64,000 nucleotides of DNA, from positions 22,134,001 through 22,198,000 of the forward strand of contig CM119377.1 of NCBI GenBank assembly GCA_051294905.1, written 5' to 3'. This document shows, piece after piece, positions 2,369-55,833 of this stretch. The notes beneath the pieces are model-generated. The model saw only the letters and a program-made list of their open reading frames with translations. It was not told the origin of the DNA and did not search any database. Made by a program: the position numbers and the translations under genes. Positions within the stretch are counted from its first letter, which is position 1. Each line of letters begins with the position of its first letter. Source of the stretch: Botryllus schlosseri (Eukaryota).

Positions 2369-2588
2369 CCATTTACGCATAATGCGATTATACAACACGC
2401 TGACTCTGCTTTGTCCGGAAACTGAGTCATCTTTAATCACAGCGGCCACTACGAATAACGACCTCTTTGCGGCGTATATGAGCACCACAACATTAAGCTC
2501 GATGACCAACTGAAAGGAAGCCGTGAGACCCTTACGGAAACTCCATGATCGCATCGCCCAATTATGACGAAAGTCACTCCGGTTGTAA
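2369..2588 (-). CDS. GPCR paralog 1, coding exon 3 (ECL1-TM3-ICL2); later exons not found, presumably left of the window
   Basis: TTTTTCAG|T YNRSDFRHNWAMRSWSFRKGLTASFQLVIELNVVVLIYAAKRSLFVVAAVIKDDSVSGQSRVSVLYNRIMRKW |GTAAGT. 220 nt, phase 2->0, same length as paralog 2. Confidence 0.9.
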
Positions 2589-3297
2589 CTGAAAAAGGAA
2601 GAGATTTCACTCGAAAAACAATCTGAGGACTGCGTTTCTAGAGCTATGTGCCGGATAGGTCTGCCGTTTGTGGACAGTAGCTATTGTCTAACATAACATA
2701 ACATATAACATGGTTGGGTTATATTTTTGATCTGAACAAGTCACACACAATGTACAATGCGATAAGACATAATGCGATGTCATGAACAGATAGGAGGATG
2801 TTGAACGACACGCATCAGTAGCGATCCTTTACTCTAACATCCACCTCGGCCTAGAGTGCCCGATGTCACAGTTCTTTTTTCGATGTTGATCTCTTTGAAG
2901 CCGCGGCCCTTTCTACTGGTTCTTTCCATTCACTGTGGGTGCTTTCTTTTCGTCGGTCTCGGGTCGGGTCTATGCCGAAATTCAATTCGACATTCATGTA
3001 CAGCATGGGTTCTTAATCTTTTTATACCCATGGTTTCCCTGGGCTGCTCATCGCCGACGTCACTACTATACGGTAGTGCATTGAAACGTCCAGACTGAAA
3101 GTGAGCCGTGCTACAAGTCGGCAGATGAGACCACGATTGGGGCGCATGTTAGTGAGAGAGACTGAAGATTGACTGGGAGAAGAGGATAAAGCAGTCCCCA
3201 AGATTACGAAAAAGCAAGGACACTATGAACATTATCACAATTCTTGTCTTGGCAGCACATAACTTGAAAAAAGCGATAAGCGCCACTGTGTTGTACC

Positions 3298-4653: not shown

Positions 4654-4844
4654 TTTTGCAAAACTCCGCCCGCAATGAACCCATCATCAAAATGATAACG
4701 AGTGTGTAGTATTTCATAAAATGCAATGATGCTGAAGCTAATGACCGAGAGGAGGCAGCTCAGCAGGTAGACGTATATTCTGTTTTGACGCAACGTTGCC
4801 CAGTTACAGACAATTGTCAGAACTAGCAGACTGTTCCATACAAT
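4654..4844 (-). CDS. GPCR paralog 1, coding exon 2 (TM1-TM2-ECL1)
   Basis: TTGCAG| IVWNSLLVLTIVCNWATLRQNRIYVYLLSCLLSVISFSIIAFYEILHTRYHFDDGFIAGGVLQ AA|GTAAG. 191 nt, phase 0->2; 56/63 aa identical to paralog 2 by hand count. Confidence 0.9.
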
Positions 4845-8321: not shown

Positions 8322-8444
8322 CAGAAATGCTGAAAACGACAGAAATATGGCAAAATAATAGCTTCTCGGATCCTCAGTCAGACACGTCTTTTCATTTGGA
8401 CTTCCTGCGATCCCGGGATCATATTCTTTAGCGGTAGTATTCAT
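8322..8444 (-). CDS. Atypical class A (cannabinoid/EDG-like) GPCR paralog 1, coding exon 1 (N-terminus and start of TM1)
   Basis: ATG at 8444; MNTTAKEYDPGIAGSPNEKTCLTEDPRSYYFAIFLSFSAFL, then donor GTAAGC (phase 0). Same 123-nt length as paralog 2 exon 1; N-glycosylation sequon NTT. Confidence 0.85.
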
Positions 8445-8854
8445 ATCGAATCGCTCTTTGAGACACGAAATTGTTATGGAATATTTTGCTGTGAAGGATA
8501 GAATAGACATATGCAGGTTAGTGGTATGCAAGTGTACACATTTGAGTAAGAAATATCCAACTTCAGGTAGTGTTGATTTCGTTTGGAGGAAATGCTAGCG
8601 ATAATCATTTAAACGAAATGAATCAAAACCAGGTATGGTAAGTTTAATTTGAAGGATAATTAAAGTTAGGTTAGGATTGCGGGCTTGCCTACGTTACGGT
8701 TCGCATAAAGGGGTTGCGCATGGCGGTTAGATTCGATTAGGGATTGGACTCGAGTTTTCGAATAGATCTTGCCAAAGGGTCACTCGAAATATGTTTATTT
8801 CTGTCACTCAAACGGTTACTGCGATACTTTTCAACATACCACATAAATGAGGAG

Positions 8855-8862
8855 TATTTATA
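8855..8862 (-). promoter_or_regulatory. Candidate TATA box (TATAAATA) of GPCR paralog 1
   Basis: About 410 nt upstream of the ATG; exactly conserved in the aligned upstream region of paralog 2. Confidence 0.5.
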
Positions 8863-11227: not shown

Positions 11228-12224
11228 AACGGGTTGCTGGTTTTAGTCCGACGAAGGTCGACTCAAGAATTCCTACCTAAGTGTTGGAGGTTTATCTAGG
11301 CTAGGGTTGCCATACGTCCGGAATTTCCCGGACATGTCCGGAATTTCACTGAAAAATCTGCGTCCGGGAGGAATTTCTAAAATATGCCTAAATGTCCGGA
11401 ATTTTGAAGGCTTGAAGTAGGCTCAAAAGTTTTTCGTAAATCAACATAAACAGTATTATTTGCAAGCATATTTATGCTATTCAAAATTCTTCTTCGCACC
11501 GCGCGCCAGTTAATGCGACGTTTATTGATATTAGTATAGGCACCAGGCATCACCCTCGCCAAAAATGCAATCAAAATAAATATAATAACCATCATTTACT
11601 GAAATAAAATCTGATTGTGGTGGGCCGAAAATCAGTGCTTTTCGAGGCGGAAGGGGAAAGAAAAATTGTTGTTTCGGACCTGATTAAAACAAACAACTGG
11701 ATAACCGCGCCGATCTAACAGTATAACAGGGCTGTCAAATATCATCCCAACACGCCGGACGATTTCATCCTGCCTGTGGCGAAATTTATTGCAGACCCTG
11801 AGCAAGTAGCAATCACCAAAGCTCACATTACAGATGGCCCAATTCATGACCTATGTTCCACTCCATTCGCATACAGTAGATGGCCAATGCTTTGCTTGTG
11901 TGACTATTGACTATAGATAACTAACCTCCGTGGGTTAGTTATCTATAGTGTGACGTTATATTGATAGACCATGTGTAACATCTTATTTTGAATCCGCTAG
12001 TGGGCACCAAAGAGTGTCCGGAATTTGCTTCACGAAAATATGGTAACCCTAATCTAGCCTCCTCCTCGCCATCTCATCCGCGTAAACGGTGTCTTGAAAA
12101 AAGTCTAGAAGTGGGCCGTGATACAAGTGGGCAGATGCGAAATGAGGGATGCAGAAAATCGGCCTGGTATAAATCACCATTGTAGTCGACAAACACCATG
12201 ACTACCCCAAACCAACAAACAACC
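11228..12224 (+). mobile_element. SINE family A copy split by a hAT MITE
   Basis: 11228-11301 and 12052-12224 rejoin into the family body (GGAGGTTTATCTAGGC|TCCTCCTCGCC). Confidence 0.8.
11302..12051. mobile_element. hAT-type MITE inserted in a SINE
   Basis: TIR TAGGGTTGCCATA/TATGGTAACCCTA; TGTCCGGAA subrepeats; TSD ATCTAGGC/ATCTAGCC. Confidence 0.88.
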
Positions 12225-16190: not shown

Positions 16191-16272
16191 GTCGTCGTGG
16201 CCGAGTGGTTAAGGCGACAGACTAGAAATCTGTTGGGCTCTGCCCGCGCAGGTTCGAATCCTGCCGACGACG
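16191..16272 (+). tRNA. tRNA-Ser-AGA: tRNA-Ser, anticodon AGA
   Basis: 82 nt; acceptor stem GTCGTCG/CGACGAC with discriminator G; A box TGGCCGAGTGG; anticodon arm ACAGA-CTAGAAA-TCTGT; long variable arm; B box GGTTCGAATCC; TTTT terminator at 16276-16279. Confidence 0.97.
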
Positions 16273-16421
16273 CACTTTTGTACATATGACTATTTTCCTA
16301 TTTTTTTCTACTACAGTGTTTCTTAACCTTCACTAGCCCTGCTAGAACTTTGCTGAACTAGAAGCATTCGACGAACACTAGATTTGGGCTGATATTCACG
16401 CAAAAGCATGATATTGTAATA

Positions 16422-23908: not shown

Positions 23909-24455
23909 GGACTCCTAGGTCGGATTCTAGGAATGACCGCGTTCCAGTCCGAAACACTGTGATAATAATTATCTACTCACAGGATGGTATTGAATATTGA
24001 TTGAAAGAATAGGAAATTGGAAACTCAAGCACACCCTTGTTTGAATCGTCAGAATCCGTTACCTAGCATGGAGCTAATTTAGTGCACCACGAAAATCCAC
24101 ACAGGTAGCGTTACGGGACACATTGCTCGCAGTGCTATCGGGGATATATATGTATCTGTATATCCTTAGGCGTTATATGTGTTGAGCATATAGCCATAAA
24201 GTGCGCTTGACCGCAATTTTACACATGGACTACGCGGCAGTATTTCGTCACGTTTTGTGCACGTCCCTGCCCCTAATGGTGTTGGTAACCAGATCCAGGA
24301 GACATGTTCTGCTCATGCCAGCAATGCTTCTCATGTAATCACGATTTTTTTTTGAAAACAAACATGATTTTAATGATACTCTAAGAGTGTGAAACACATC
24401 GCATTTAAACTCAACACCGTTCGCAGGATAGACCCGAGAATATAGCTTATCTTCA

Positions 24456-24712
24456 TTAGGTGCCTCTTCCGTCCACGACATTGTTCGGTTGCTTTGTGCT
24501 TTTTCGTTTCATTCGTCCGCTTGCAGTGCCTTGCGAATGTCGTTTTTTCGTCGAGTAGTTTTTGATTGTAACGCTTGTTAAGCACGGAAGCTTGAATATC
24601 ATGCTTTTGCAGGCCTGCTGCAGCCCGCCCATGTACTTGATCAATATTACGGGCATGATTAAGATGTGTAAAAACGAAACGATGAGAGTGGGATCGATGT
24701 TCGGTATTGGCC
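24456..24712 (-). CDS. GPCR paralog 2, coding exon 8 (TM7, helix 8, C-tail, stop)
   Basis: TCCTACAG|(G)PIPNIDPTLIVSFLHILIMPVILIKYMGGLQQACKSMIFKLPCLTSVTIKNYSTKKRHSQGTASGRMKRKSTKQPNNVVDGRGT*. 257 nt. Total CDS 1368 nt (455 aa); possible ATTAAA poly(A) signal at 24369-24374. Confidence 0.85.
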
Positions 24713-25454
24713 CTGTAGGAGTTACATAATATTATTAATGTGTATCAACATGCGCAATACTGCAGCAGTCTTGGGTGGGCAGTAAATATGGAAATCCACT
24801 TTTTTAATTACTCAAGCAATTTTCCACTACTTTAAGTACTTGCCGAAACAAATCGATTTTTACCATACTTCTACTTCGTAATATTTTGTGATTTACTTAG
24901 TTAGTTTCCGGCATTTACAGTTTGTCAAGTAGAGGTATTATGTTGTTCAAATCACCGAGAGATAGAGAGACAGAGAGAGGCAGAGATTGGGAAATTCGGG
25001 CGCTATAAGTTATCAAGGAGTACCAACAAGACTTTATTGTTCACAAGCATTGATGGAAGTCGAGAATTGTCGTTGTGCTTCCCGAAATGTATATGGAGTG
25101 ACAAATGTGTTTTCATGAAAGCTTCGTGAATTTCGACAATTATTTTCGCCCATACGACATGTTTCATCACAGTAAATATGAAGCAGCAAAACTAAAGTTT
25201 AGAACCGATTTTCCATTGAAAACTATCATTGCATCCCGTGATGCGGTCGAATTCGTACGCTGTGAAACATGTATTGTATATTTCCCAGCTCTCTTCATCG
25301 TCCGCATAAATCAGAGATTCCAGCTTTTCACAGTACATCAGAGAGGTATTTATGACGGCATTTCAGAACTACTAGCGAGTTTGCGAGCTACAAAGTTTGA
25401 CCCAACGGGTATATAGTGTGGTCTCAAGATTACTGCATATGTATGCATACAAAC

Positions 25455-25596
25455 CTTCCGGCGCAAGTACATCCACGACACTTGCCGTTATGAATGGAGT
25501 CACTGACAAAATCACGATCACGGTAAGTGCAATCAGAAGCTTCACTGTGGAGTGAAATGACACATGCGTGCAGCAGTTCTTCAATCCGCAATCCGT
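25455..25596 (-). CDS. GPCR paralog 2, coding exon 7 (TM6)
   Basis: GTTTTCAG| TDCGLKNCCTHVSFHSTVKLLIALTVIVILSVTPFITASVVDVLAPE G|GTTTGT. 142 nt, phase 0->1; P6.50 retained. Confidence 0.82.
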
Positions 25597-27624
25597 CTGA
25601 AAACAGCTGTTGTTACCGTGGCCGTATGATGTAAATCCAGGGTTGTAATGACTTGAGTTATGGCTCGACTTGAGCGGCGATTGTTGGTTGATTCAACTTG
25701 ACCCGAGTCATTTCGTTAAATGCCAAAGATGACTCGACGAAGTCATATGACTCGAGACTCGGGCGGCCGAGCCAGGCATTTCAGTGTAACTTTGAAGAAA
25801 AGTGAAGTTCCACATTATTGGTATTTCCTCTCTCAGTAATCGCACATGAATATTAGGGCCATAAATTATTCGGAATTTAAAAAATTAGCATATAAGGAAT
25901 GGAAGGAAATCTATATCACCCAAGCAGGGTTGTAAAAATTGGGCTGAATATTACTTGAACTCCGACTCGAGTCTTAACACGATGACTCGGAATGGACCAT
26001 CCGCACCCTGACTTAGACTCGGACTTGACTCGGTAATGAATTGAAAAGGACTCGACTCAAATCTATGAAAGTAAGATTGAATTGCGATTCGTAACCTTGT
26101 GACTTGGTTACCACCATGCTTAAAACCAAGGGGGTTGCCGTTTTACCCATCCTGATGTCAGATTCAGCGAAACCATTTTCCTATTCATGACGCCATAGTA
26201 GAATCGAGACGCTCTATCTGGAAATCTTTCTTTTCGTTCAATGAGCCAGATAATGAACCTGTATTGTTTATTGTAATTCCCAAGAAGCCATATCATATTG
26301 TCAGTCAACTTTATTGTTATGTCATGGGGGCACGAAATCGAGGTTCCCCACATGGGATTCGTGCTCCTAGTCATATTGTCAGTAATAAAAGCTGTTATGA
26401 TGTTGTAGCACCCGCACTAATCAAGTCATTTAGTCAGACTTCTTGTGTCACTATGCGATCAGTGCATGCTGTGCATCACAATATCGCTTTCCACTAGATA
26501 TCGAATAGTTGAAGATTTGATATTTGTGCGTTGACTAACGGTTCGAATTGGAATATCGAAAGTACTGATTACACACGTCAACAAAATGATTTATTTTTTG
26601 GCAGAACAGCAAGGAATGTTTTCTGTTTTTTTAAGGCTGCTGATTACTATTATTATAAATATGACATTACTTTTGCAAGATTGGATCTAGTTTACAAGAT
26701 AGGTATGCTCCTGAATAAGTCCAAATTTCTGTATTTACCCATAAATATTTCACATAGTAGAATAAGTAAATTATAACCTTTTCGACGTCTATAATGCGGA
26801 TAAAAATATAATTGACTATGGCGAAGTGTCACGTGGCTCTCGGTTAATCAATCAATCTGAACTCGTCCTGGTGCGAGATGTTTCTTTGTCAAAAAAGCAG
26901 TCTTGTCAAGCCTAAACATCGTACTTTTGTACAAAGAAAATATATTTTCTCCTGTACCAATCGGTCATTCTACCAAGATGAAAGAGAAGTATGAGGCTGT
27001 CAAATTCGACGTTTAAAAGCGTAACTACAACACTCATATATGGCTGATTTCTGTTGACTTTTACCTAGTCAATTTTCTGCTGGCCAACAAAATGGATATA
27101 TACCAAGTAATCTGTGTTTTTAAGTTTGTGGGACGTGAGGACGAGAATGAAGCACTGGCGCAAAACGTACTGGCCAGAATGAACCAGTCTTCCAGTTTGA
27201 ACAGTTGTGTAACCAATGAGCAATCAGGACCGTAACTGCCCCCCCCCTCCCCAAACCCCCAAAGAGGTGGGCGAGCTCGAAGGAGGGGGGGCAAAATTAC
27301 TTCGTGAATTAACATAAATCATATAGTCTTTTTCGGAAATTTATGCAACAGTTTCATTTTTTACGCGCTGCTCGCGCTTTAATGTTGTCGAATATCTTGA
27401 TTAATGGGTACCCTTACCCAACAAAAAATAAGCATGATTTATAGAAATGAGCACTTCGGTGTCGGCCATTACCGCACCACGACGCACCAAATCATATTAA
27501 TTTACAGGCCATGTGACATACGACTCCGAGAAGTGTGCCAGAACGATCAGTAGCGAAAAGACCTTGGCCGAAAAGGACTGCCCTTGTGCTGACCGAAAAC
27601 TTCTATATATACAATACATATATG

Positions 27625-28901
27625 CAGAGGTGGTCAAAGTAGTCCAGAAAGCTACTCAAGTAGACGCAGAAGTAGCGACGAAAAAATCTACTCAAGTACG
27701 AGTAGAAGTACTTCTTCCAAGAGCCATCTAAAACTACTGGAAGTAGAAGTAGAATTGACTGACTTTAAATCTACTCAAGTAAGTAAGTAGTTTTGAAAAC
27801 AGTCTTAATTCGTTCGCATGGACTGTCAAAAGCTGGAAATTGAGCTACGCGAAAGGTGCACAGACTTGATTCGTATTGATGCATCCGCCCAGGAGGTATC
27901 AATTTTCGACAGAATAAACACTCTTTCGCATCATGGGATGCAAATTATAGTATTGATATGAAAATGCGATACTAACTATTTTTTTACTAGAAAACCCCAT
28001 TTTAGACAATATCATGGCATGGCGCCCTATACCCCATATTATAAGGCACCAAGTTTAGGCGAAGAGCAATACGGAAAAGCTGTATCGGATACGGTTTCAA
28101 CACTTTGCGCGCGATTAGTATACGTTAATAACAAATATTATGGATCGTAAAATTTATATTTAGTATAGCTTTATTTTAGGAAAATAGAGGCATTACTACA
28201 CTTGCTTTTATGCTTCAACATGTATGTTCTGCAGACAAAAGAACTGAAAGTAATTAGAACGCAAAGTATTATACTCGGGATTGAAAGTGAAATATACAAA
28301 TACTACTTCTAAAAAGCGGAAAATATATTTCATGTCTTTTGTCCATAAAGCTTCAAAGGTGAAATGCTAAAACAGGAGTAACGTTGAAAAAGCCGGATTT
28401 TCCAGATCAGCAGGACACGTCATGGGCTGCTAGAATACGATACAATACGTAATTGCTGGATTGCGAAACGGTAGTTTCAAACGTTATGGGAGGCCATATT
28501 TACTTTGATGAAATATTTGATATGGGCGACAATGCGGTGTGAGTGGAACCAAGCAACCCGGTACCTAAATACTTTCGTGAAAACATATTTGGCACTCCAT
28601 AACTACTGCGCGCGAAGCACAACAAAATTTCTGGGCTTTACTTGACTTTTATGAATATTAAAAGTTGGTACTCCGTGAAAACAGCCCCGAAATTCCTCAG
28701 GCTATCTTTCGTATGGGGGGATTAAACTACTCCTACTTGACAAACTGAAAAAAGCGAAAAGTAAGTAAGTAGATCACAAAATATTACGAAGTAGAAGTAG
28801 AAGTAGAGAAAATCATATCTACTTGATTAAGTACCAGAAGTAGAGGAAAATTACTTGAGTACTTCCAAAAGGTAGAAGTACTTCGTTACTGGCCACCTTT
28901 G
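27625..28901. mobile_element. hAT-type element with AGTAGAAGT subrepeats (nested)
   Basis: Termini CAGAGGTGGTCA/TGGCCACCTTTG; TSD CATATATG/CATAAATG. Confidence 0.8.
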
Positions 28902-29329
28902 CATAAATGTTTAATTGTCCACAGGCGCCTAAATAGCTGGCGCCGAATGTTCCTGTCCTGGCGATCTGAGCTCCACAAGATAAATGCCATCTCGAGGGAA
29001 CATTATTTACCGGTAAAGAAATACGACTTTGAAATCGTGTACGTTTTTTAGTATAGTACGTTTGAGCGATTTCAATATCTTTTGAAATAGCAGATAGGAG
29101 GTCACGAAATAGCATCATTTAACGAAGTCAGTAAACCAACGGGTACGCCCGAAGAAGTTTAATTCTATTATTCAGGGGTCCTGCCTTTTCCAACACACCT
29201 CACTCAACTGTACCGGTAAATCTGATTATGTGAGCAGAGATAGGATAACATTTATAGCAACCCTGATATGCCAAATCATTAATTATAGATATACATGCAT
29301 GAGTATATGTAATTGGTATTGCATATAGG

Positions 29330-30618
29330 CAGGGCCGTAACAGCACTTCGTCAGCCCCATAAAAAAAAAAAAAACTTTGGTCTTGGGCCCCCCACAAGGT
29401 TATAGACCTAACTTATGGGGGGCGTCGCCCCCCAGACCCCCCTCCGGCGATACACTCTTTGCCGCTATTTACCATATTCATTGGGACTTTGTTTAGTGAA
29501 TCAGCTTTTGTCGCCTAAGCGCGGAAAAATTTATAGAATTCATGATTGAATCGGTCAGTATGATCGGGAATTGCCTATATTGTTATCAATTTTTATCTTC
29601 TCTCTGCTCACGTAATCAGATTTGCCGGTAGAGCTGAGTGAGGTGTGTTTGAAAAGGTAGGACCACTCCATTAATAATTGAACATCTTCAGGCGTATACC
29701 CGTTGGCAGGAACGAAACAGCACCTCGTCAGGCCCCCAAAAACGTGGGTCTTGGGCTCCCATAGGGTGATAAAACGACCCCCCCCCATCTCGTTGTTCGC
29801 GTTTGTCACGAAATCATCTGTACTGTACTGTGAGCCAGCGCGAAGCGCGAAAATTTTCGATAATTTATGATAAAATCGGTCAATCAGATCGGCGATTGCA
29901 TATAAATTATGCTATCAATTTATTTTCCTCTCTACTCACGTAATTAGATTTACCGGTAGAGCTGAGTGAAGTGTCTTGAAAACGGGATGGCCCGTAAATA
30001 ATAATTAAACGTTTTCTGGCGGGCGGACCCGTTGGTATGACTTCGTTACATGATGTTATTTCGTGATATCCAGTCTGCTATATCAAAACATATAGAATCG
30101 CCCAAACGTAGGCTTCTAAACTAACAGACGCACACGATTTCAAATTGGTATTTCTTCACTGGCATAATTTTTTTCCCAGCGGGATGGTATTTGTCTTGTG
30201 AGGTTCAGATTGCAAAGACAGGAACATTCGGCGTCAGTCATGTAGGCGCCTATGTACAATTAAACCTATGTGTATTTTATATATAGAACGCGGTCTTCGG
30301 TCAGCATAAGGGCATAGACCTTTTCGGCCAAGGTTTTATCGCTGCCGATCGTTCTGGCACACTTCTTGGAGTCGCATGTTATAGGGCCTAAAACTTGATT
30401 GTAGGTCTTGGTGGTTCGTAGCGCGGTAATGGCCTAATAGCCAATAATAAATATAAATGGCTTCTTGAATTCGCGCGCAGCGCGAAAAAATTTTGAAAAA
30501 TTGGCATAAATTTTCAAAAAATACTTTATGCTTTATGCTAATTCACGAAATAATTTTGGGCCCCCTTCGAGCTCGCCCCCCCCAATTGGGGGGTTTGGGT
30601 GCGGCAGTTACGGTGCTG
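29330..30618 (+). mobile_element. Non-autonomous hAT element (CAGGGCCGTAAC family)
   Basis: Termini CAGGGCCGTAAC/GTTACGGTGCTG; perfect TSD CATATAGG; internal ~377-bp tandem unit. Confidence 0.88.
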
Positions 30619-30658
30619 CATATAGGCCAATGTATATGGCTGTCTGTATAATGTATGA

Positions 30659-31655
30659 CAGGCGTCGCCAACTCAAATCGGGTCGCGGGCCACTTTTCAA
30701 ATTTCGCAGCGGCCGCGGGCCGCATGAATTCAATATCGGTATAAACTAGGCAACCATCGTTTTGAAACTCTACGTCAGTACAACGCCGTGCTACTTAATT
30801 TAGGCAATGGGCGTAGTGACCACAAAATAAGTAATATTTTATCAAAGGAATACAAATACAACAAAAAATCATTATCATTCATTTCATTTTATTTTGAAGT
30901 CTGAGCTGTGCACGATACTGGAAACGATTTTCAGCGAATAAGGCCTCGATATTGGGGCTAGCGAGATACGTTACTAGCTGAAATACCATCTCCATGTAAA
31001 GTTTGATATTGTGGGGAAGCCCTAAGCCAGTGGTTCTCAAACATTTTTAGACACCCCCCCCCCCCCCTTAATGATACTGAAAACTTTCGCTCCCCCCTCA
31101 TCGTCATATCACAAAATGCAACCAGAATGCTAGCAATCCCAACAGATAGTTTGATGACATTGAAGGTTATGACTGTTGATATACACAAAATATAAATTTG
31201 ATGTAAATCGCGCGGGGCGCGAGAAATTTTTCAGTTGACCGCAGCTCCGCGCCCTCTTAAGATGCTTTCACGCCCGCACAAGAGGGGCGCGCAGTCCAGT
31301 GAACCACTGCCGTATGCCGTTTTATAGGCGTCTCGATCTTGGCAGTGTTTTGGCCATTGCACGTCAAGGCAATATGCCCAGCCCATTCATTTCAGCAGAT
31401 TATTCTTCCTCGATGGAATGCTGTTGCCATCTCCAAAGCCGTTTTTGCTAGTAACGAATGGTGATGTTGGGCAAAGGAGAATAAGCTAAGCTATAGCTTA
31501 TTTCGAAACAACAACAACTACAACAACAATGCTTGAAACTGCATTTCAAAATCGTTTTCTCAGTTTTCTTCTGAAATCTCAAATCACGTCGCGGGCCGCA
31601 AAATATGACCTCGCGGGCCGCATGCGGCCCGCGGGCCGCGTGTTGGTGACCCCTG
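30659..31655. mobile_element. hAT-type element, hosting MITE 31028-31309
   Basis: Termini CAGGCGTCGCCAAC/GTTGGTGACCCCTG; perfect TSD ATGTATGA. Confidence 0.88.
31028..31309. mobile_element. Charlie-like MITE (nested); homolog at 38418-38736
   Basis: CAGTGGTTCTCAAAC...GAACCACTG; TSD CCCTAAGC/CCGTATGC; body aligns with 38418-38736. Confidence 0.75.
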
Positions 31656-31812
31656 ATGTATGAGGTGACCAGATGACTTGAAGGCCTGTTGGTCGTATCG
31701 CTGGCCACGATTTCACAGCATTACTTTATTGCACCTGGAAATAAACTTCTGTCTGTCTGTCTGTCTGTCTATCTGTCCTATTAGGTCTTACATACTAACT
31801 CACTATTATTAC

Positions 31813-31895
31813 CTCCGACCCAAGTCTCGATGATATGTCGTGTTCGGATACAGACCATGAACGAGCCTCCTTTGCTTCAACAGGGTTCCGCGGCT
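31813..31895 (-). CDS. GPCR paralog 2, coding exon 6 (ICL3); alternative donor would extend it to 31804
   Basis: Follows a 67-nt intron: TTGTTCCTTGCAG|(E)PRNPVEAKEARSWSVSEHDISSRLGSE|GTAATA, or +VII|GTGAGT. Both donors are phase 0. Confidence 0.72.
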
Positions 31896-31962
31896 CTGCA
31901 AGGAACAAAAGCAGGAAATTCGTAACATGAGTAGCTCGTGTGTAGCTATTATTCATATTCAC

Positions 31963-32157
31963 CTGCTGAAGTTCGAGGAGAGGAAGCTGCTTGATATTGC
32001 CTTATCACAAAAACCAGGGTAACAATCATATACGCCACAGAAGCAAAATAGATTGATCCCACCACAACGAAGAAACTCTTCCTCATTGGCAACCAGACAC
32101 GTGAACAAATGACGGCTGCATCGTCTGTGTAAACAAGGTGATGCTGCGAACACGCTT
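31963..32157 (-). CDS. GPCR paralog 2, coding exon 5 (ECL2-TM5)
   Basis: AACGCAG|(E)ACSQHHLVYTDDAAVICSRVWLPMRKSFFVVVGSIYFASVAYMIVTLVFVIRQYQAASSPRTSA G|GTGAAT. 195 nt, phase 1->1. The acceptor is weak but is the only AG downstream of an in-frame TAA. Confidence 0.82.
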
Positions 32158-33201
32158 CTGCGTTGCAGGTTTATTTAGCTCGGAGGTGGGCGAACAGAAT
32201 CCGCACCTAAATTGGCTCTGCTGAAATTCCTCGCGCTGTCGTTGCAGCAATTTAAAAATGCCGCTGAAATTGCGTCCAAAATCTAGTCTTATTTGAACTT
32301 CAATATACAATTGAATAGTATATTCATATTGAAGTGAACCCGAATACTTTCGGCTGACACCTCGTAGAGGGTAATCGTCAGCAACTAGCAGAGAATTGGA
32401 AAGAATATGGTATGTTTTATGGAAATTGAGGATAATTAATTGTAAATAATTTTAAAATATATACATGCTTGCCACATGAAATAATTAGGTAACATTGCCT
32501 AGAACGTAACAGTATATGACCAACATCATCTCAGTAAAGATATATTGTAGAATTCTAGTGATTTGTGTCTGTGATTACAAGAGCCCGACAACGGCGACCA
32601 AGCATGTTAAAGTGGTTTCGACTGCTTAAAATCCCAATACCGCGTAGCGGAAATGTTCGAGTTATATCACCAGTCACCATTTAAATGGGTAACTACCGGT
32701 AGTTGTTTAGCAAGCCAGGAAAGTTATTATAGTATCAGTGAAGCATTTAGTTATAAGACTGATGCTTGGTTTGTGGCGATTCAGTCACAGTATGCGATGG
32801 CAGGTAAAGAAAGTCTGTAATAAGCTGGTCATAGCAATCTGAAAAGCGAAATGTGGAAGAAAGGCTTTGTATATAGCTTTGACAGCCCGGCTACTGGACA
32901 GGCACAACTAATAACCGCCATAAATGACGCGAAATGACGCGTGGATGTTCGGGCGTTTTTTAGTTAATTTGATCAATACCAAAGCAGCATTATTATAAGT
33001 GGGTCATTCGGGTGTCGAGTAGGAAAAATTACTTTTTTTCTAGTCTACGCAACAGGATTTTCCGTAAAGAATTTTAGAATCAGCAGTTTTCTAGTCTAGC
33101 AGTCTAATTTTTGTGATTTGTAAATAGTGTCCAAATATGGTAACCCTAACGACATGGGTTATGGCCTTTGTAGTCCATACAAATGATGATGCATCACTAA
33201 C

Positions 33202-33358
33202 CTGATATGCACGTTGAGATCAACTTGAAGCTGGGAAGACATTTGCAGTGTTCGAGACAGTTCCACTCGAATGCTGTTGGGATTGAAATACCAATAGGAA
33301 GAAGCCACGTCACTGTTATTATAAGAGCTGCCTCGCGATCTTTCGAAATTTTGGCTGT
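33202..33358 (-). CDS. GPCR paralog 2, coding exon 4 (TM4, start of ECL2)
   Basis: GCTAATACTTCAG| TAKISKDREAALIITVTWLLPIGISIPTAFEWNCLEHCKCLPSFKLISTCIS G|GTTAGT. 157 nt, phase 0->1; W4.50...P and WNC motifs. Confidence 0.88.
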
Positions 33359-33911
33359 CTGAAGTATTAGCATAATGACGAATCAAGGATAATTAGGCTC
33401 ATGTAATTATGATCAAAGTCACAAAGATGAAGCTTGTCCAGTCCTTTTCGCATTTGATTCGGTTTACTGGCGCCAAATTTACTTCAGCACTCATAGTTCA
33501 GTTATTCCCAACCTCGGCTCTTATTATTCCAGGAAAATCCCACGAAAATATAATAGACAGTTATAGTTTGGTTCTGTGAATAGTTCTCGTCAATTGCTGT
33601 ATGGCAATGCTGAATCAAACTAGAAATGTCTATTATATATTTTAATTTGGTTTTAGCCGCTCATTGCAGTTTCTGAAAGCCGGGAAGAGAATTTCTGCAG
33701 ACTACAGTACTTATTAACTAGCATTAAGCGCATGGATGGATACCCTTCAGATAATTTGATATATCTTGAATTTTAATGGGGATAGACCTTTATAGATTAT
33801 TTCTGTATTGAGCACATCCCCATACAATTTTATTAGCATCAAAATGACGGCTACTAGTCAACTATAAATTGCAATAACTAAAATATGCATACGGTGTATA
33901 CTACAACTTAC

Positions 33912-34131
33912 CAACTTGCGTATAGTGCGATTATACAACGCCATAACTCTGCTTTGTCGGGAAACTGGGACATTTTCAATCACCGCGGCCACTACGAATA
34001 ATGACCTCTTTGCGGCAAACACGAGCACCACAATATTAAGCTCCATCAGCAAATGAAAGGAGACCGAGAGGGCCTTACGGAAACTCCATGATCGCATCAC
34101 CCAATTATGACGAAAGTCAGTCTGATTGTAA
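33912..34131 (-). CDS. GPCR paralog 2, coding exon 3 (TM3, long ICL2)
   Basis: CTTTTCAG|T YNQTDFRHNWVMRSWSFRKALSVSFHLLMELNIVVLVFAAKRSLFVVAAVIENVPVSRQSRVMALYNRTIRKL |GTAAGT. 220 nt. Confidence 0.9.
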
Positions 34132-34527
34132 CTGAAAAGGAAGGATGGATTTTTTTTACTCGAGTACCATTCTGAGGATGATCTTTCTGCTGCAATGACA
34201 AGTTGCTCAACCCGGTATGCCGAAATCCAATTCCACTTTCATACAACTCATATAGTCTTGTAGCAGATCAAAAGCAATCATTATCACCATCCACCCCATG
34301 TCAGTAGGCTACCCAAGTGTCACGGGAATGGGTGGATTCACACCTTTAAAACGTACAGACCAAACTATAAAATCCTATTGTTTTCATTCAAAAGTAAATT
34401 CTAATGCCATGTTGAATTGACTTTTACTCCACAAGACACTCACTTCACAACCAATTTCAATTAGGGTATGTATTATGATTCATGAAGTCTACAAGCCGTG
34501 CTTGTTACCAAAAAAAATATGTCTTAC

Positions 34528-34718
34528 TTCTGCAGAACTCCGCCCGAAATAAACCCATCATCAAAATGATAACGGGTGTGAAGTATATCATACAATGCAA
34601 TAATACTGAAGCTGATGACCGAGAGGAGACAGCTCAGCAGATGTACATATATCCTGTTATGGCGTAACATTCCCCAGTTGCAGACAATTGTCAGAACTAG
34701 CAGACTGTTCCACACTAT
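34528..34718 (-). CDS. GPCR paralog 2, coding exon 2 (TM1-TM2)
   Basis: TTTCAG| IVWNSLLVLTIVCNWGMLRHNRIYVHLLSCLLSVISFSIIALYDILHTRYHFDDGFISGGVLQ AA|GTAAGA. 191 nt; class A N1.50 in WNSLLV. Confidence 0.9.
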
Positions 34719-34904
34719 CTGAAATGGACGATATTGTAAGAAATTATAACAGCACAGTCCAATATATCAGGACTCAGGAGTGACTAACTTCCGTTATATT
34801 GGAATTGACCGAAATGTTTTGCAAGACCGGCGATCGATCATTTGGTTAGAGAGAAGTGTCACTGATGTACTTTTTTTCTGATACTTGTACCGTGGAATAA
34901 TTCA

Positions 34905-35635
34905 TGTTACCTGTTTGGGGTTTATCTAGGCTACTCCTCGCCATCTGATCCGCCTATGCTGTGCGTAACAAAAGCCTAGAGGAGGGATTACCAAGATTTC
35001 AATCTCGTGGATCCCTTCGGCGAATATTTGAACCGAAATTACCCCCTAAGAAAAAGTAGCCCGGTGACTAAAAATGTCATCTTTCCCGCACAAGCAGTCG
35101 TTGACTAAATTCACCGATTTAGCTTAACGTCATGTATTTTAAATCGATGAATTTGGCATATTTGTTCTTGGCCGGGAAGACGTTGACTTGAGAAAAGAGA
35201 TGAACAGTTTCACATGACTTTTACGAGCGTAAGCAATTTGGTCGAGAGGCAGTCGCGTGACGCACAAAATCGTCTCGCAAGCCGCAGTTTTGTTAAATTT
35301 GGGCTGGTTTCAAAAACACACTGGAAACGAAAACGGTAGATTTTAAATAGCATTTAAACATACCGGAAGCTATAAATCAGTCAAAAAGCACATTCATATG
35401 CAATAGTTTGGCCATAAATGAGAAGCTTGATGAGTCCATAGGTGTACCTTCCATTATAACCCGACAGTCAACCCCCCCCCCCCCCCTTTAGTGGGGAATC
35501 TACGGTTGGGAACCACTTGGCCTTGATCGAAAGTGGGTCGTGGCTACAAGTCGGCAGATCAGGAATCCCCTGAAATCGCCTTGGTGTAATATGACCAAAA
35601 CAGTCGAAACACCATGACTACCAAACCAACCATAA
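34905..35635 (+). mobile_element. Headless SINE family A copy split by a hAT MITE (34982-35519)
   Basis: The SINE body resumes after the MITE; degenerate TSD GCCTAGAG/GCCTTGAT. Confidence 0.6.
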
Positions 35636-36281
35636 GAAAAGTAAATGGTCGTTGGCACACCTGAACTAATCTAATTTGTTACTTATGGCATGTTACTATG
35701 GTATAGGTATGTACGGACCATGATTTTTTTTTAGAATGCGGGTCCAATCCTGTTCGATAAAATGAAATCCGGATCCAAAAATTTTATGCACAAGTTTGAG
35801 CATCTATTTGCTCCTGTCGTCGATATTTTATAATCACACCTCGTCAATGCATTTTGATTTTCTATTAGTTATTTTTCGAAATGCTGAAGTCAGCTGAGTC
35901 CAAGTTCCTACAAAACATCGAAGTAAACGAACATAAAGTCACTTCCATGCACTAGAAATTTAGAATCCCGTCCTGATCCGGATCATGCAGTCGGGAAAAA
36001 TGTGAACCCGGATCTTGGATCCCGGAACCCGAAACTTGCCGGATTCTTGTCCGGTTGTAATCAAAAGTCATGATCCTGTAATTGTGTACAATGTACATCT
36101 CCAGTCTGGTACTCTTGGTGGCGCCCAAAATTGATATGGTTTACTGAGTGCAGTTAAAAGCCGACAATGCATTGTATCGTATGTTGCTTCATTTCTCTCC
36201 TGAATCTTTTGACAGCTTTACAAACCCAAATCAAGTGCTTGTATATTGTTTCAATACTATTTCCATATAAATGCAACTCAC

Positions 36282-36404
36282 CACAAATGCCGTGAAAGAC
36301 AGAAACAGGGCAACATATTGGCTTCTAGGATCCTCAGTCTGGCACGTGATTCCATTTGGAAGTACTGTCGTGGCGGAATCATATTTTATGGTGGTAATAT
36401 TCAT
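36282..36404 (-). CDS. Atypical class A (cannabinoid/EDG-like) GPCR paralog 2, coding exon 1
   Basis: ATG at 36404 with an in-frame TGA 6 nt upstream; MNITTIKYDSATTVLPNGITCQTEDPRSQYVALFLSFTAFV |GTGAGT. 123 nt. Confidence 0.85.
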
Positions 36405-36693
36405 ATAGCATCACTCTTTGTTACAAGTGATTGTTCTGAAATATTTGTGTGCAATCGATATGCAGATGTGGATTAGGTCTACAGCGGGATACACGTTGAA
36501 ACGAGCGGCAGCTCATTTGAGGGACCTATAATTCAAGTCAGGGTAGGTTCAATTTGATTTGAATGACAAATCAAAGATCAGGCTAATAAAACCCATGGTT
36601 GCGGGTTAACTACGATGATTCAAATATAGATCGCGCCACTTTATTCTCAAACGGTTAAAACGTTACTCTTCAAAGTGTCACTTAAATGAACCG

Positions 36694-36701
36694 TATTTAT
36701 A
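36694..36701 (-). promoter_or_regulatory. Candidate TATA box (TATAAATA) of GPCR paralog 2
   Basis: About 290 nt upstream of the ATG; orthologous position to 8855-8862. Confidence 0.5.
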
Positions 36702-53107: not shown

Positions 53108-53188
53108 CCGCAGGGCCAACGGATTGCTGTCGTAGTCGACTGGTTGACACGTCAAACTATATCTTGCATAATAAGCCGAGAAGAAAAA
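53108..53188 (-). CDS. ELOVL4: ELOVL4-like elongase, coding exon 3
   Basis: TTGTTCAG| FFFSAYYARYSLTCQPVDYDSNPLALR |GTATGT. 81 nt; CQPVDY motif. Confidence 0.92.
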
Positions 53189-53247
53189 CTGAACAATGAA
53201 AGGGAACGGTTAATGGTATGCAAAATTTCAGTGTATGGATAACATAC

Positions 53248-53435
53248 CTCATACGTCATATACAAGGAAGCTAGCACCATAAAGAAGTTGTACAAAACTA
53301 TGATTGATCTCAATTTTAAAGGGTGCAGTGCGCGCGTAATCTCTCTCGCGTTCCAACATATCACATTGTATACAACGACGGTGAGTATCGGCCCCCACGG
53401 ACTGTGAACCAACAGCCAATCAGCAGTGCGCGGAT
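53248..53435 (-). CDS. ELOVL4: ELOVL4-like elongase, coding exon 2
   Basis: TTTTTTCAG|(D)PRTADWLLVHSPWGPILTVVVYNVICWNAREITRALHPLKLRSIIVLYNFFMVLASLYMTYE|GTATGT. 188 nt. Confidence 0.92.
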
Positions 53436-54810
53436 CTGAAAAAATTACTTGCTTATATATTGGATAATATTGCTTGAGCTTGAGATGCCTAGTGGGACCG
53501 GTAACCTTTGATAAAGTGATAGAGTCTATAAAATGCGCGGGAAAATAGCGACGGTCATTTATGAGTGCAAGTTTTCGCAGCTTTTGTAACTTTTTTTACA
53601 GCTTCCTAGATACTCAGAATTCATGTACTATGATGTTTTAAGGTGTTTGGAGGGATCTTATAGCGCAACTTTTTGCAACTTTTCTCTATTTTTCATGTCA
53701 AGTTTTACTGCAACTTTTATCAAATATTGCGTAATAATGTGAAAGACTGATTTAAAAACATGCTGTAAACTATTTCTAGTATGGTTCTATTCTCTTTGAT
53801 TTGCATAACAAAGAGGTATATGATGGGTTAGCTGCATCTCATTGCTATATATGACACAATTGCTGGCAAGCAAGAAGTTCAACTCCCCCAGCTAAGCACG
53901 ACCGTGGCCGAACAATAAGTATAAATAGATCGCTTTATTAATTCAGTCGTTTAAATTTTTGAGGTAGTTTCCCATTTCACAAACGCCAAGGCGAGACCTC
54001 CGAAAACTACATTTTCACTTGGTCACTTTATTCAGGTTATTGATTTTGTTAAAGTCGCCGAGAGTGAGTTTTTCCGCAATGCCTTGGGTTAAGTTTGCAG
54101 ACCTAGGGAGTTTGGCATATGTTATTTGACTTGGTTTAGGGGGCTATCGCTATGCTGTTTGGCGTTTCTTGATGTATATTAATCCCGCATTGCGTAATTT
54201 TCTTGCTGTATGCCGGATATAAATGTCATTTTTGGTGGTTTCGGCAGTTCGTCCGTGAAATGGCAAAGTGAAAATAAATTTGACAGCTCTGTAGGAGGTA
54301 GGTTACACAACGGAACCTTTCGAGTATCTCATACCCTAATATTTCAATAAAAATTACAAATGTAACTTTTTACTCCAACTTCCGTTAAAATTAAGTGCCA
54401 CTTTTTCGCGATTTTAATGCAACAAAAACTTGCGCTATTTATGACGAAATATAGATCGATAGATGATGTCTTGATTAATTAAACATTACACTTGAGCAGC
54501 TGTTCTTATTCGGTGTTCCCTGGAAACCCAGAGATTCCCTGAAGGTCAATTCAACACACTCAGCTCATACACATGATTTGTGATGACCCGCTGGTTATCG
54601 GCGTCATTGGTAGTAGGCAATTAGGCCCGATTAGTAGACGAGTTGTGACTGCTGCGGCGGCACGCCGTGTGCAATGACGTACCAGAAGGAGGTTACGTTC
54701 GAAATCGAAACCATGTCCTTGTGAAATGCCAGTACAGTGCTTCAATATACAATTGCATAATATATATTGATATTGAAATGAACCCGTCAGGGATAATCGT
54801 CAGCAACTAG

Positions 54811-55244
54811 CAGAGATGAGCGGATTTGAAATTTCTATGTCCTAATCCAATCCAAATCCGAACCTTCAAATCCATATCCACATCCTAATCCATGACTTTT
54901 TCATATTCAAGTCCATGTCCAATCCTAATCTGATACCAGCTGGAAATTCAGAAACAATACCAAGTTATGCAATGAAGGGATTCGAAAATTTTCTTTCACA
55001 ACCAACGATTCACTTGATTCAAGATAACTTAGTAATCACTAATCATAAGTACATTAATAACTGATCTGAATGAAGTTTGTCGCCATTCGCCACACGACAT
55101 TTCAATCTCCCAGAAAATAGGTAAATCCAATCCAAATCCTAATCCGTTCTGAAAAAAATGTCTAATCCAAATCCAATCCAAATCCGACAAAATTTCACAA
55201 ATCCTGTTTTTTCAAAACCTAATCCTAATCCATGCTCATCTCTG
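54811..55244. mobile_element. hAT-type MITE, AATCC-repeat family
   Basis: Near-identical to 42505-42931; TSD GCAACTAG/GCATCTAG; empty homologous site at ~32370-32410. Confidence 0.92.
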
Positions 55245-55833
55245 GCATCTAGTAGAGAATTGGAAAGAACATTGTATGTCAACAATCGTATCACAAAAGA
55301 TGACGTCACCAGCGATGAGAGCGCTTAAGCTCAATGTACTATTTTTTGATGGTACACGAACTCTTTATGTGGGCACAGACTTGGTTGGCGTATTTTGATA
55401 TAATTCGATTCGAAGGAATACAAATGAAAGTGTGAACGGTCTCTCCCGACAGCAAGAAATCTATCGTCCCGCTAATTTGTCGAGTAGGATTATCCAACAA
55501 ATGTTTGCCAATGACAGAATTTATGACCTTGTTCTGTTCTGAATCAAGTTTCAGGGGATGGGTCAAGGACAAGGGTGAGCCTTCCACAGAGCGTGATGCG
55601 CGTGTTCTAATAAGTCTAGGGACGTGCTGTTTTATGCAGTTCTGCAAACGTTGCTGCGTTTTCCTACGGAGCCACAATCACAGTGACACCTATATTCATA
55701 AACTACATTACTTTGTTGACGTGCAGGAAGAACGTCTTTGCGTGTTGCAGTGAGCAGTTGGGTTGTCGTAAAAATAAGCCTATCCGCAATTGAGCAATTG
55801 CAATCACGATGTTGCGTTCCGAACGAACAGTAC

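What the first reader, a model, noticed from the sequence alone, without database searches (positions are those of the whole stretch)
24456..36404. Hidden 8-exon, ~455-aa atypical cannabinoid/EDG-like GPCR, tandemly duplicated
Seen: eight phase-compatible GT-AG exons give one stop-free ORF with seven hydrophobic helices, N1.50 (WNSLLV), W4.50 (TWLLP..SIP), P6.50, P7.50 and a helix-8-like segment. A second copy (8444-2369) has identical exon lengths (123/191/220 nt). Established: WxxR(Q/E)G at the top of TM3, WNC...CSxxxP in ECL2 and absence of the TM3 C3.25 cysteine characterise LPA1-3, S1P and CB1/CB2 receptors. Here these read WSFRK(G/A)L and EWNC...CSRVWLP, with no TM3 Cys. A cannabinoid receptor orthologue is known in Ciona, and ascidians lack vertebrate-type olfactory receptors. 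Inference: a lineage-expanded, highly divergent lipid-receptor-like family, possibly lipid or chemical sensors, that ORF-based annotation misses.
Basis: partly seen in the sequence, partly recalled or inferred. Interest (0 to 1): 0.85.

Follow-up and report, generated by a model that had tools for sequence, protein, structure and literature searches.

The report
Divergent orphan seven-helix receptor gene pair
Two neighbouring, intron-rich genes, probably in a sea squirt, encode a very divergent rhodopsin-type membrane receptor kept intact by selection, but nothing I could run ties it to cannabinoid or lysophospholipid receptors, and no transcript was seen.

Summary
The sequence observation holds. 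On the minus strand, eight GT-AG, phase-compatible exons (36404 to 24456) give a 458-aa open frame with seven hydrophobic helices. A second copy has exons 1-3 at 8444-2369 with the same lengths (123/191/220 nt) and then leaves the window. The copies align only in and just around exons, without indels. dN/dS is 0.36 (p = 2e-5), so both have been selected as coding genes.

Class A membership has modest support, all from exon 4 (TM4): Pfam 7tm_1 at E = 0.0038, PDB hits almost all class A TM4, and protein-atlas hits all 7tm_1 at score 0.95. Exon 7's only two PDB hits are class A TM6 at E of 1 or more. Exons 2, 3, 5 and 8 match no receptor.

The cannabinoid/EDG reading is not supported. No S1P, LPA or CB receptor appears at E up to 10 for any exon, and the cited motifs are inexact. 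The real shared trait is a TM3 without cysteine plus a six-cysteine ECL2.

Exon 3 has no relative among 1.84 billion representative proteins. Four bulk RNA runs gave about zero exon depth and no splice joints. The spliced protein could not be given to any tool, so no whole-protein profile, fold or tree was run.

Earlier scan notes on this gene come from this same window. The look-ups I made showed none on other DNA.

The parts
36282..36404 (-). Copy 1 exon 1: ATG, N-terminus with NIT sequon, first half of TM1
   Evidence: ATG and GTGAGT donor are conserved in copy 2; model
34528..34718 (-). Copy 1 exon 2: rest of TM1 (WNSLLV, N1.50), ICL1, TM2, start of ECL1
   Evidence: CAG acceptor and GTAAGA donor are conserved; 89% aa identity to copy 2
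33912..34131 (-). Copy 1 exon 3: ECL1 end (NQT sequon), TM3 without cysteine, KRS in place of DRY, long ICL2
   Evidence: Splice sites conserved; 70% aa identity to copy 2; no homologue found
33202..33358 (-). Copy 1 exon 4: ICL2 end, TM4 (W4.50), EWNC and first four ECL2 cysteines
   Evidence: Pfam 7tm_1 E = 0.0038; PDB hits are class A TM4; atlas 7tm_1 score 0.95
31963..32157 (-). Copy 1 exon 5: rest of ECL2 (CSRVWLP), TM5 without proline, start of ICL3
   Evidence: Only phase-compatible acceptor that keeps the hydrophobic frame; no receptor hit
31804..31895 (-). Copy 1 exon 6 (least certain): hydrophilic ICL3 segment after a 67-nt intron
   Evidence: Best of 11 phase-compatible candidates: 85% pyrimidine tract, GTGAGT donor; no RNA or paralogue support
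25455..25596 (-). Copy 1 exon 7: ICL3 end, TM6 (SVTPF, P6.50)
   Evidence: Its only two PDB hits are TM6 of GPR65 and XCR1, at E = 1 and 2.5; phase fits
24456..24712 (-). Copy 1 exon 8: ECL3 end, TM7 (MPVIL in place of NPxxY), helix-8-like stretch, basic tail, TAA
   Evidence: Phase fits; ATTAAA lies 81 nt past the stop, at 24374; no receptor hit
8322..8444 (-). Copy 2 exon 1 (123 nt)
4654..4844 (-). Copy 2 exon 2 (191 nt)
2369..2588 (-). Copy 2 exon 3 (220 nt); the later exons lie beyond the start of the window
   Evidence: tblastn finds no E4-E8 match in 1-2368

Best explanation
These are two tandem paralogues of a fast-evolving, lineage-restricted orphan receptor of the rhodopsin (class A) type. 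Earlier scan notes suggest the animal is a sea squirt; I did not check that.

Shown: the protein has seven helices, and its N-terminus faces outward. It appears to keep the landmark residues N1.50, R3.50, W4.50, P6.50 and P7.50. These positions were assigned by eye, without an alignment. It appears to have replaced the activation switches: there is no acidic residue in TM2 at the expected D2.50 position, DRY reads KRS, CWxP reads SVTP, and NPxxY reads MPVIL.

Inferred: the outer face is a 35-aa ECL1 plus a 49-aa ECL2. The six cysteines of ECL2, with no partner on TM3, would form disulfides within the loop and make a rigid lid over the pocket. A ligand from outside would be sensed there. Signalling inward would use the retained R3.50, a long basic ICL2 (about 23 residues longer than usual), ICL3 and a basic Ser/Thr-rich tail, possibly with non-canonical coupling. 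Expression is probably rare or confined to few cells, as with chemosensory receptors.
For: Gene reality: exon-limited conservation, conserved splice sites and identical exon lengths between the copies. dN/dS is 0.36 with p = 2e-5. The frame is intact over eight exons.

Topology: seven hydropathy peaks. Lys+Arg against Asp+Glu is 2/0 in ICL1, 8/2 in ICL2 and 12/1 in the tail, against 0/3 to 5/4 in the outer loops. The N2 and N107 sequons lie outside.

Class A: exon 4 hits Pfam 7tm_1 at E = 0.0038 on profile positions 86-143, the region before and through TM4 as I place it. Its 41 PDB hits are nearly all class A receptors at TM4; the exceptions are seven cytochrome b559 chains and one toxin. Its atlas neighbours are 7tm_1 fragments, with score 0.95 and 178 shared features. 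Exon 7's only PDB hits are class A TM6.

Lineage restriction: exon 3 has no hit at E up to 0.001 among 1.84 billion representatives, and metagenome scans and the exon 4 search found nothing. Ascidians are known to carry many lineage-specific 'Other Rhodopsins' (PMC2396169).
Against: Only one exon of eight reaches a suggestive score. No piece reaches the Pfam gathering score (17.2 bits against 30.5). Exons 2, 3, 5 and 8 find no receptor at all. The atlas found nothing for exons 3 and 7.

There is no RNA support. Exon bins had about zero depth and there were no joints in four bulk runs, each sampled at 6-13%, and no RNA run was listed as holding the stretch.

Exons 4-8 have no paralogue check, and a codon-usage test did not separate their frame from a second frame. 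The whole protein was never profiled or folded. Ligand, coupling and expression are inference.
Confidence: 0.7

Rival explanations
1. One reading: a highly derived offshoot of the lysophospholipid/cannabinoid (EDG/CB, GPR3/6/12) branch of class A, possibly still sensing lipids.
For: TM3 has no cysteine and ECL2 has several, as in S1P1/3, LPA1 and CB1/2 (PMC8779880). WNC follows TM4, 14 residues after W4.50, though by my recollection that spacing is general in class A. TM5 has no proline; from memory, this is also true of EDG, CB and melanocortin receptors. GPR6 is among the exon 4 hits at E = 1.2-2.
Against: No S1P, LPA or CB receptor appears at E up to 10 for any exon, although I expect many to be among the solved structures. 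Opsin, D2, 5-HT1A and D3 outrank GPR6. Exon 3, which carries the WSFRK motif, hits nothing. The motifs are inexact in spacing and register. As I recall, EDG/CB receptors keep E/DRY and NPxxY, and this protein does not.
Confidence: 0.12
2. The model is partly wrong or the gene is silent. Exons 6-8 may not belong to the same transcript, or the locus may be a recently inactivated or unexpressed relic.
For: No reads and no joints fall on the exons. A 6.2-kb repeat-rich intron precedes exon 7. Exon 6 rests on splice signals alone. The codon test is ambiguous for E4, E6 and E8.
Against: All eight exons are open and in phase, and they supply exactly the missing TM6 and TM7 in the right order. Exon 7 hits class A TM6. 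No other TM6/TM7-like exon lies in the intron. dN/dS below 1 argues for long-term function of at least exons 1-3. The RNA sampling was shallow and from bulk tissue.
Confidence: 0.12
3. A seven-helix membrane protein that does not belong to class A, such as another receptor or transporter-like fold.
For: Most exons have no similarity to class A, and nearly all class A switches are absent.
Against: Three independent methods assign exon 4 to 7tm_1 at the correct position. No other Pfam family was hit by any exon.
Confidence: 0.05

Closest known systems
Ascidian 'Other/Unclassified Rhodopsins' (Kamesh et al. 2008, PMC2396169)
   Same: Both are rhodopsin-type receptors of sea squirts with no reliable orthologue elsewhere, thought to be lineage-specific or fast-evolving. 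Sea squirts lack vertebrate-type olfactory receptors.
   Different: I could not compare sequences, so membership of any described Ciona group is untested. No relative of exon 3 turned up in the 1.84-billion-protein library.
Lysophospholipid and cannabinoid receptors (S1P1-5, LPA1-3, CB1/2) and GPR3/6/12
   Same: Both lack the TM3-ECL2 disulfide and have cysteines within ECL2. Both have WNC at the end of TM4. TM5 has no proline (the comparison here is from memory).
   Different: There is no detectable sequence similarity. DRY, NPxxY and D2.50 are lost. ECL2 carries six cysteines and about 30 extra residues, and ICL2 is about 23 residues longer. The motif spacing differs.
Class A alpha-group receptors (opsins, dopamine and serotonin receptors)
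   Same: These are the best matches for the TM4 exon: SWS1 opsin at E = 0.018, then D2, 5-HT1A and D3.
   Different: The match covers about 45 residues only. There is no retinal lysine context and no aminergic D3.32, and the rest of the protein is unrecognisable.

Membership tests
Class A (rhodopsin-like) GPCR, Pfam PF00001 | Seven transmembrane helices, N-terminus outside | tested here: met
   Seven hydropathy peaks. The charge balance of the loops and the position of the sequons fit an N-out, C-in topology.
Class A (rhodopsin-like) GPCR, Pfam PF00001 | Profile match at or above the gathering score | tested here: inconclusive
   Only single exons could be scanned. Exon 4 scores 17.2 bits (E = 0.0038) against a cut-off of 30.5, and the other exons score nothing. 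The whole protein could not be submitted.
Class A (rhodopsin-like) GPCR, Pfam PF00001 | Landmark residues N1.50, R3.50, W4.50, P6.50, P7.50 | tested here: met
   WNSLLV, KRS, TVTW, SVTPF and MPVIL were read from the model. The W4.50 placement is backed by the alignments. The others were placed by eye.
Class A (rhodopsin-like) GPCR, Pfam PF00001 | Activation switches D2.50, D/ERY, CWxP, NPxxY | tested here: not met
   TM2 has no acidic residue at the expected place. KRS, SVTP and MPVIL replace the other motifs, and KRS is identical in both copies.
Class A (rhodopsin-like) GPCR, Pfam PF00001 | Class A fold by structure | not testable with these tools
EDG/cannabinoid (MECA-type lipid) receptors | Sequence or tree grouping with S1PR, LPAR, CB | tested here: not met
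   None of them is hit at E up to 10 by any exon or two-copy profile. A tree could not be built because no reference sequences were obtainable.
EDG/cannabinoid (MECA-type lipid) receptors | No C3.25; disulfide within ECL2 | tested here: met
   Neither copy has a cysteine in exon 3. ECL2 has six cysteines. The trait is described in PMC8779880. The bonds themselves are inferred.
EDG/cannabinoid (MECA-type lipid) receptors | WNC...CSxxxP in ECL2 and WxxR(E/Q)G at the top of TM3 | tested here: inconclusive
   WNC is present. CS is followed by four residues before P where I recall three, and it lies 35 residues after WNC. WSFRK(A/G) lies 27 residues before R3.50, against 25 in S1P1 as I recall it.

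The most novel reading that the evidence does not exclude
A sea-squirt-specific family that descends from the lipid-receptor branch of class A. On this reading it has shed every canonical activation switch, gained a three-disulfide ECL2 lid, and serves as a chemosensory family in animals that lack vertebrate-type olfactory receptors.
Probability: 0.1. Interest if true: 0.65.

Novelty: new variant of a known kind. Interest (0 to 1): 0.35.

Why it matters
If the gene is expressed, it adds a receptor family to sea squirts that ordinary similarity searches cannot see. It would also be a natural example of a rhodopsin-type receptor kept under selection after losing nearly all the residues thought to drive activation. 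Its ligand and coupling would bear on how chemical sensing works in the closest invertebrate relatives of vertebrates. As it stands, this is an orphan gene pair with no known expression or ligand.

Tried and rejected
- Pfam on each exon found only exon 4.
- An exhaustive HMMER search with exon 3 gave 0 hits.
- PDB searches with exons 2, 3, 5 and 8, and with two-copy profiles of exons 2 and 3, gave no receptor. The NprR hit for exon 2 (E = 0.11) is to a soluble protein and I take it as chance.
- The atlas found nothing for exons 3 and 7.
- Metagenome scans with the exon 2 and exon 3 profiles found nothing.
- A word-index search with exon 4 found nothing.
- RNA: no run was listed as holding the stretch. 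In the one read-laying run (window 30700-36650), reads fell only on intronic repeats. A handful of X15 reads fell in bins over E2, E4 and E5, too few to interpret.
- A codon-usage test trained on exons 1-3 scored E4-E8 above all 2000 intron samples, but it did not separate frame 0 from frame 2.
- Joining E5 directly to E7 was rejected because the phases clash. The only in-phase alternative donor (GTGATA) would cut TM5 short.
- No third copy lies in the window.
- The sandbox holds no profile library.
- Left out: whole-protein Pfam scan, structure prediction, fold search and a tree. The spliced protein has no reference, and I did not type it in.
Full report
**What is there.** The window has about 40% G+C and no gaps. 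On the minus strand between 36404 and 24456, stop-free segments carry hydrophobic stretches in the order expected of a seven-helix protein. I fixed the exon ends from splice signals, reading phase and comparison with a second copy. The model has eight exons: 36404-36282, 34718-34528, 34131-33912, 33358-33202, 32157-31963, 31895-31804, 25596-25455 and 24712-24456. All introns are GT-AG, with lengths 1563, 396, 553, 1044, 67, 6207 and 742 nt. The frame is 1377 nt, or 458 aa, and ends in TAA. An ATTAAA signal lies 81 nt further on.

**The second copy.** tblastn and blastn find exons 1-3 again at 8444-8322, 4844-4654 and 2588-2369 on the same strand. Their lengths are exactly 123, 191 and 220 nt, with the same splice sites and no indels. 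The later exons of this copy lie beyond the start of the window. Similarity between the copies is confined to the exons, short flanks and a few interspersed repeats. Over 178 codons the copies are 73.6% identical in protein and 83.3% in DNA. dN is 0.139 and dS is 0.386, giving a ratio of 0.36. Synonymous changes are enriched, with Fisher p = 2e-5. Both copies have therefore been kept as coding sequence since the duplication. Exons 4-8 of copy 1 have no such check. Exon 6 was picked as the best of 11 phase-compatible candidates, with an 85% pyrimidine tract and a GTGAGT donor 67 nt after exon 5.

**Transcription.** No public RNA run was listed as holding the exon 2-3 stretch. The one read-laying run covered window 30700-36650 (exons 1-6) in four bulk RNA runs of the same species label, each sampled at 6-13%. 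Depth over the exon bins was about zero and there were no joints. Reads piled only on intronic repeats such as 32292-32490, and most matched only in part. This neither confirms nor refutes splicing. It does show that the gene is not abundantly expressed in those samples.

**The protein.** There are seven hydropathy peaks. The loops fit an N-out, C-in topology. Lys+Arg against Asp+Glu is 2/0 in ICL1, 8/2 in ICL2 and 12/1 in the tail, against 2/3, 3/3, 5/4 and 0/3 in the N-terminus and the three outer loops. The N2 and N107 sequons lie outside. Read by eye, the class A landmarks N1.50 (WNSLLV), R3.50 (KRS), W4.50 (TVTW), P6.50 (SVTPF) and P7.50 (MPVIL) are present. D2.50, D/E3.49, Y3.51, W6.48, N7.49 and Y7.53 are not. 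KRS is identical in both copies. ECL2 is 49 aa with six cysteines, and exon 3 has no cysteine in either copy. The distance from R of KRS to W4.50 is 49 residues. Rhodopsin and S1P1 have about 26, as I recall their sequences, so ICL2 is about 23 residues longer than usual.

**Is it class A?** Tools refuse proteins read through stops, and the spliced protein has no reference, so only single exons could be searched. Exon 4 hits Pfam 7tm_1 at E = 0.0038 (17.2 bits, below the 30.5 cut-off) on profile positions 86-143, which I take to be the region before and through TM4. Against solved structures it returns 41 hits at E up to 10. Nearly all are class A receptors aligned at TM4: SWS1 opsin at 0.018, then D2, 5-HT1A, D3, GPR6 and 5-HT2B. 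The exceptions are seven cytochrome b559 chains and one toxin. In the protein atlas its neighbours are 7tm_1 fragment clusters, with score 0.95, 178 shared features and recognition 2500. Exon 7's only two PDB hits are TM6 of GPR65 and XCR1, at E = 1 and 2.5. Exons 2, 3, 5 and 8, and the two-copy profiles of exons 2 and 3, find no receptor. The atlas gives nothing for exons 3 and 7. Together with the topology and the colinear order of the hits, I rate class A-type membership as likely but not proven.

**Is it cannabinoid/EDG-like?** The literature confirms that S1P1/3, LPA1 and CB1/2 lack the TM3-ECL2 disulfide, and that S1P1 has a disulfide within ECL2 (PMC8779880). This protein shares that trait. 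But no S1P, LPA or cannabinoid receptor appears at E up to 10 for any exon. The one relative of that group on the list, GPR6, ranks below opsin and amine receptors. The motif matches are loose. CS is followed by four residues before P, where I recall three in EDG/CB. CS lies 35 residues after WNC. WSFRK lies two positions off the EDG register counted from R3.50; this comparison is again from my memory of S1P1. The W4.50-to-W spacing of 14 is, as I recall, general in class A. I therefore treat the lipid-receptor link as a resemblance with about 0.12 probability of kinship.

**Relatives and context.** Exon 3 has no hit at E up to 0.001 among 1.84 billion representative proteins. Metagenome scans with the exon 2 and exon 3 profiles confirmed nothing. 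A word-index search with exon 4 found no candidate. Earlier notes of this scan call the genome a sea squirt, and one names Botryllus schlosseri. I did not test this. Sea squirts are reported to have many lineage-specific "Other Rhodopsins", one "unclassified EDG/CNR-like" receptor and no olfactory-type receptors (PMC2396169). A divergent orphan receptor pair fits that known pattern.

**Verdict.** This is a real, selected, tandem pair of genes for a very divergent rhodopsin-type receptor. The specific cannabinoid/EDG assignment, the family expansion and the expression all remain unsupported. Whole-protein profile, fold and tree analyses are the decisive missing steps.

Noticed in passing
window 53155-53595 (-): An exon of a fatty-acid elongase (ELOVL) gene: Pfam ELO at E = 3.4e-9, covering profile positions 2-66.
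   Followed up: partly
window 16191-16273 (+): A tRNA-Ser(AGA) gene lies between the two receptor copies.
   Followed up: partly
window 32292-32490: An intronic stretch reaches RNA depth of 25 to over 300 (both mate orientations summed) across all four runs. Reads match only in part and have loose ends on both sides. Pieces of the stretch recur at 54740-55279. It is probably an interspersed repeat transcribed elsewhere.
   Followed up: partly
window 35472-35674: Many RNA reads end here, with a run of C as the loose part before 35472. The stretch also has diverged copies at about 1214-1319, 3097-3129 and 12109-12216, so it is another repeat.
   Followed up: no
window 36646-36700 and 8807-8861: A 55-nt block upstream of both start codons is 76% identical between the copies. 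It may be a shared promoter or 5' UTR element.
   Followed up: no
window 33912-34131: ICL2 is about 23 residues longer than in typical class A receptors. TM3 carries a conserved Glu-x-Asn (ELN) in both copies, while TM2 has no acidic residue at the expected place.
   Followed up: no
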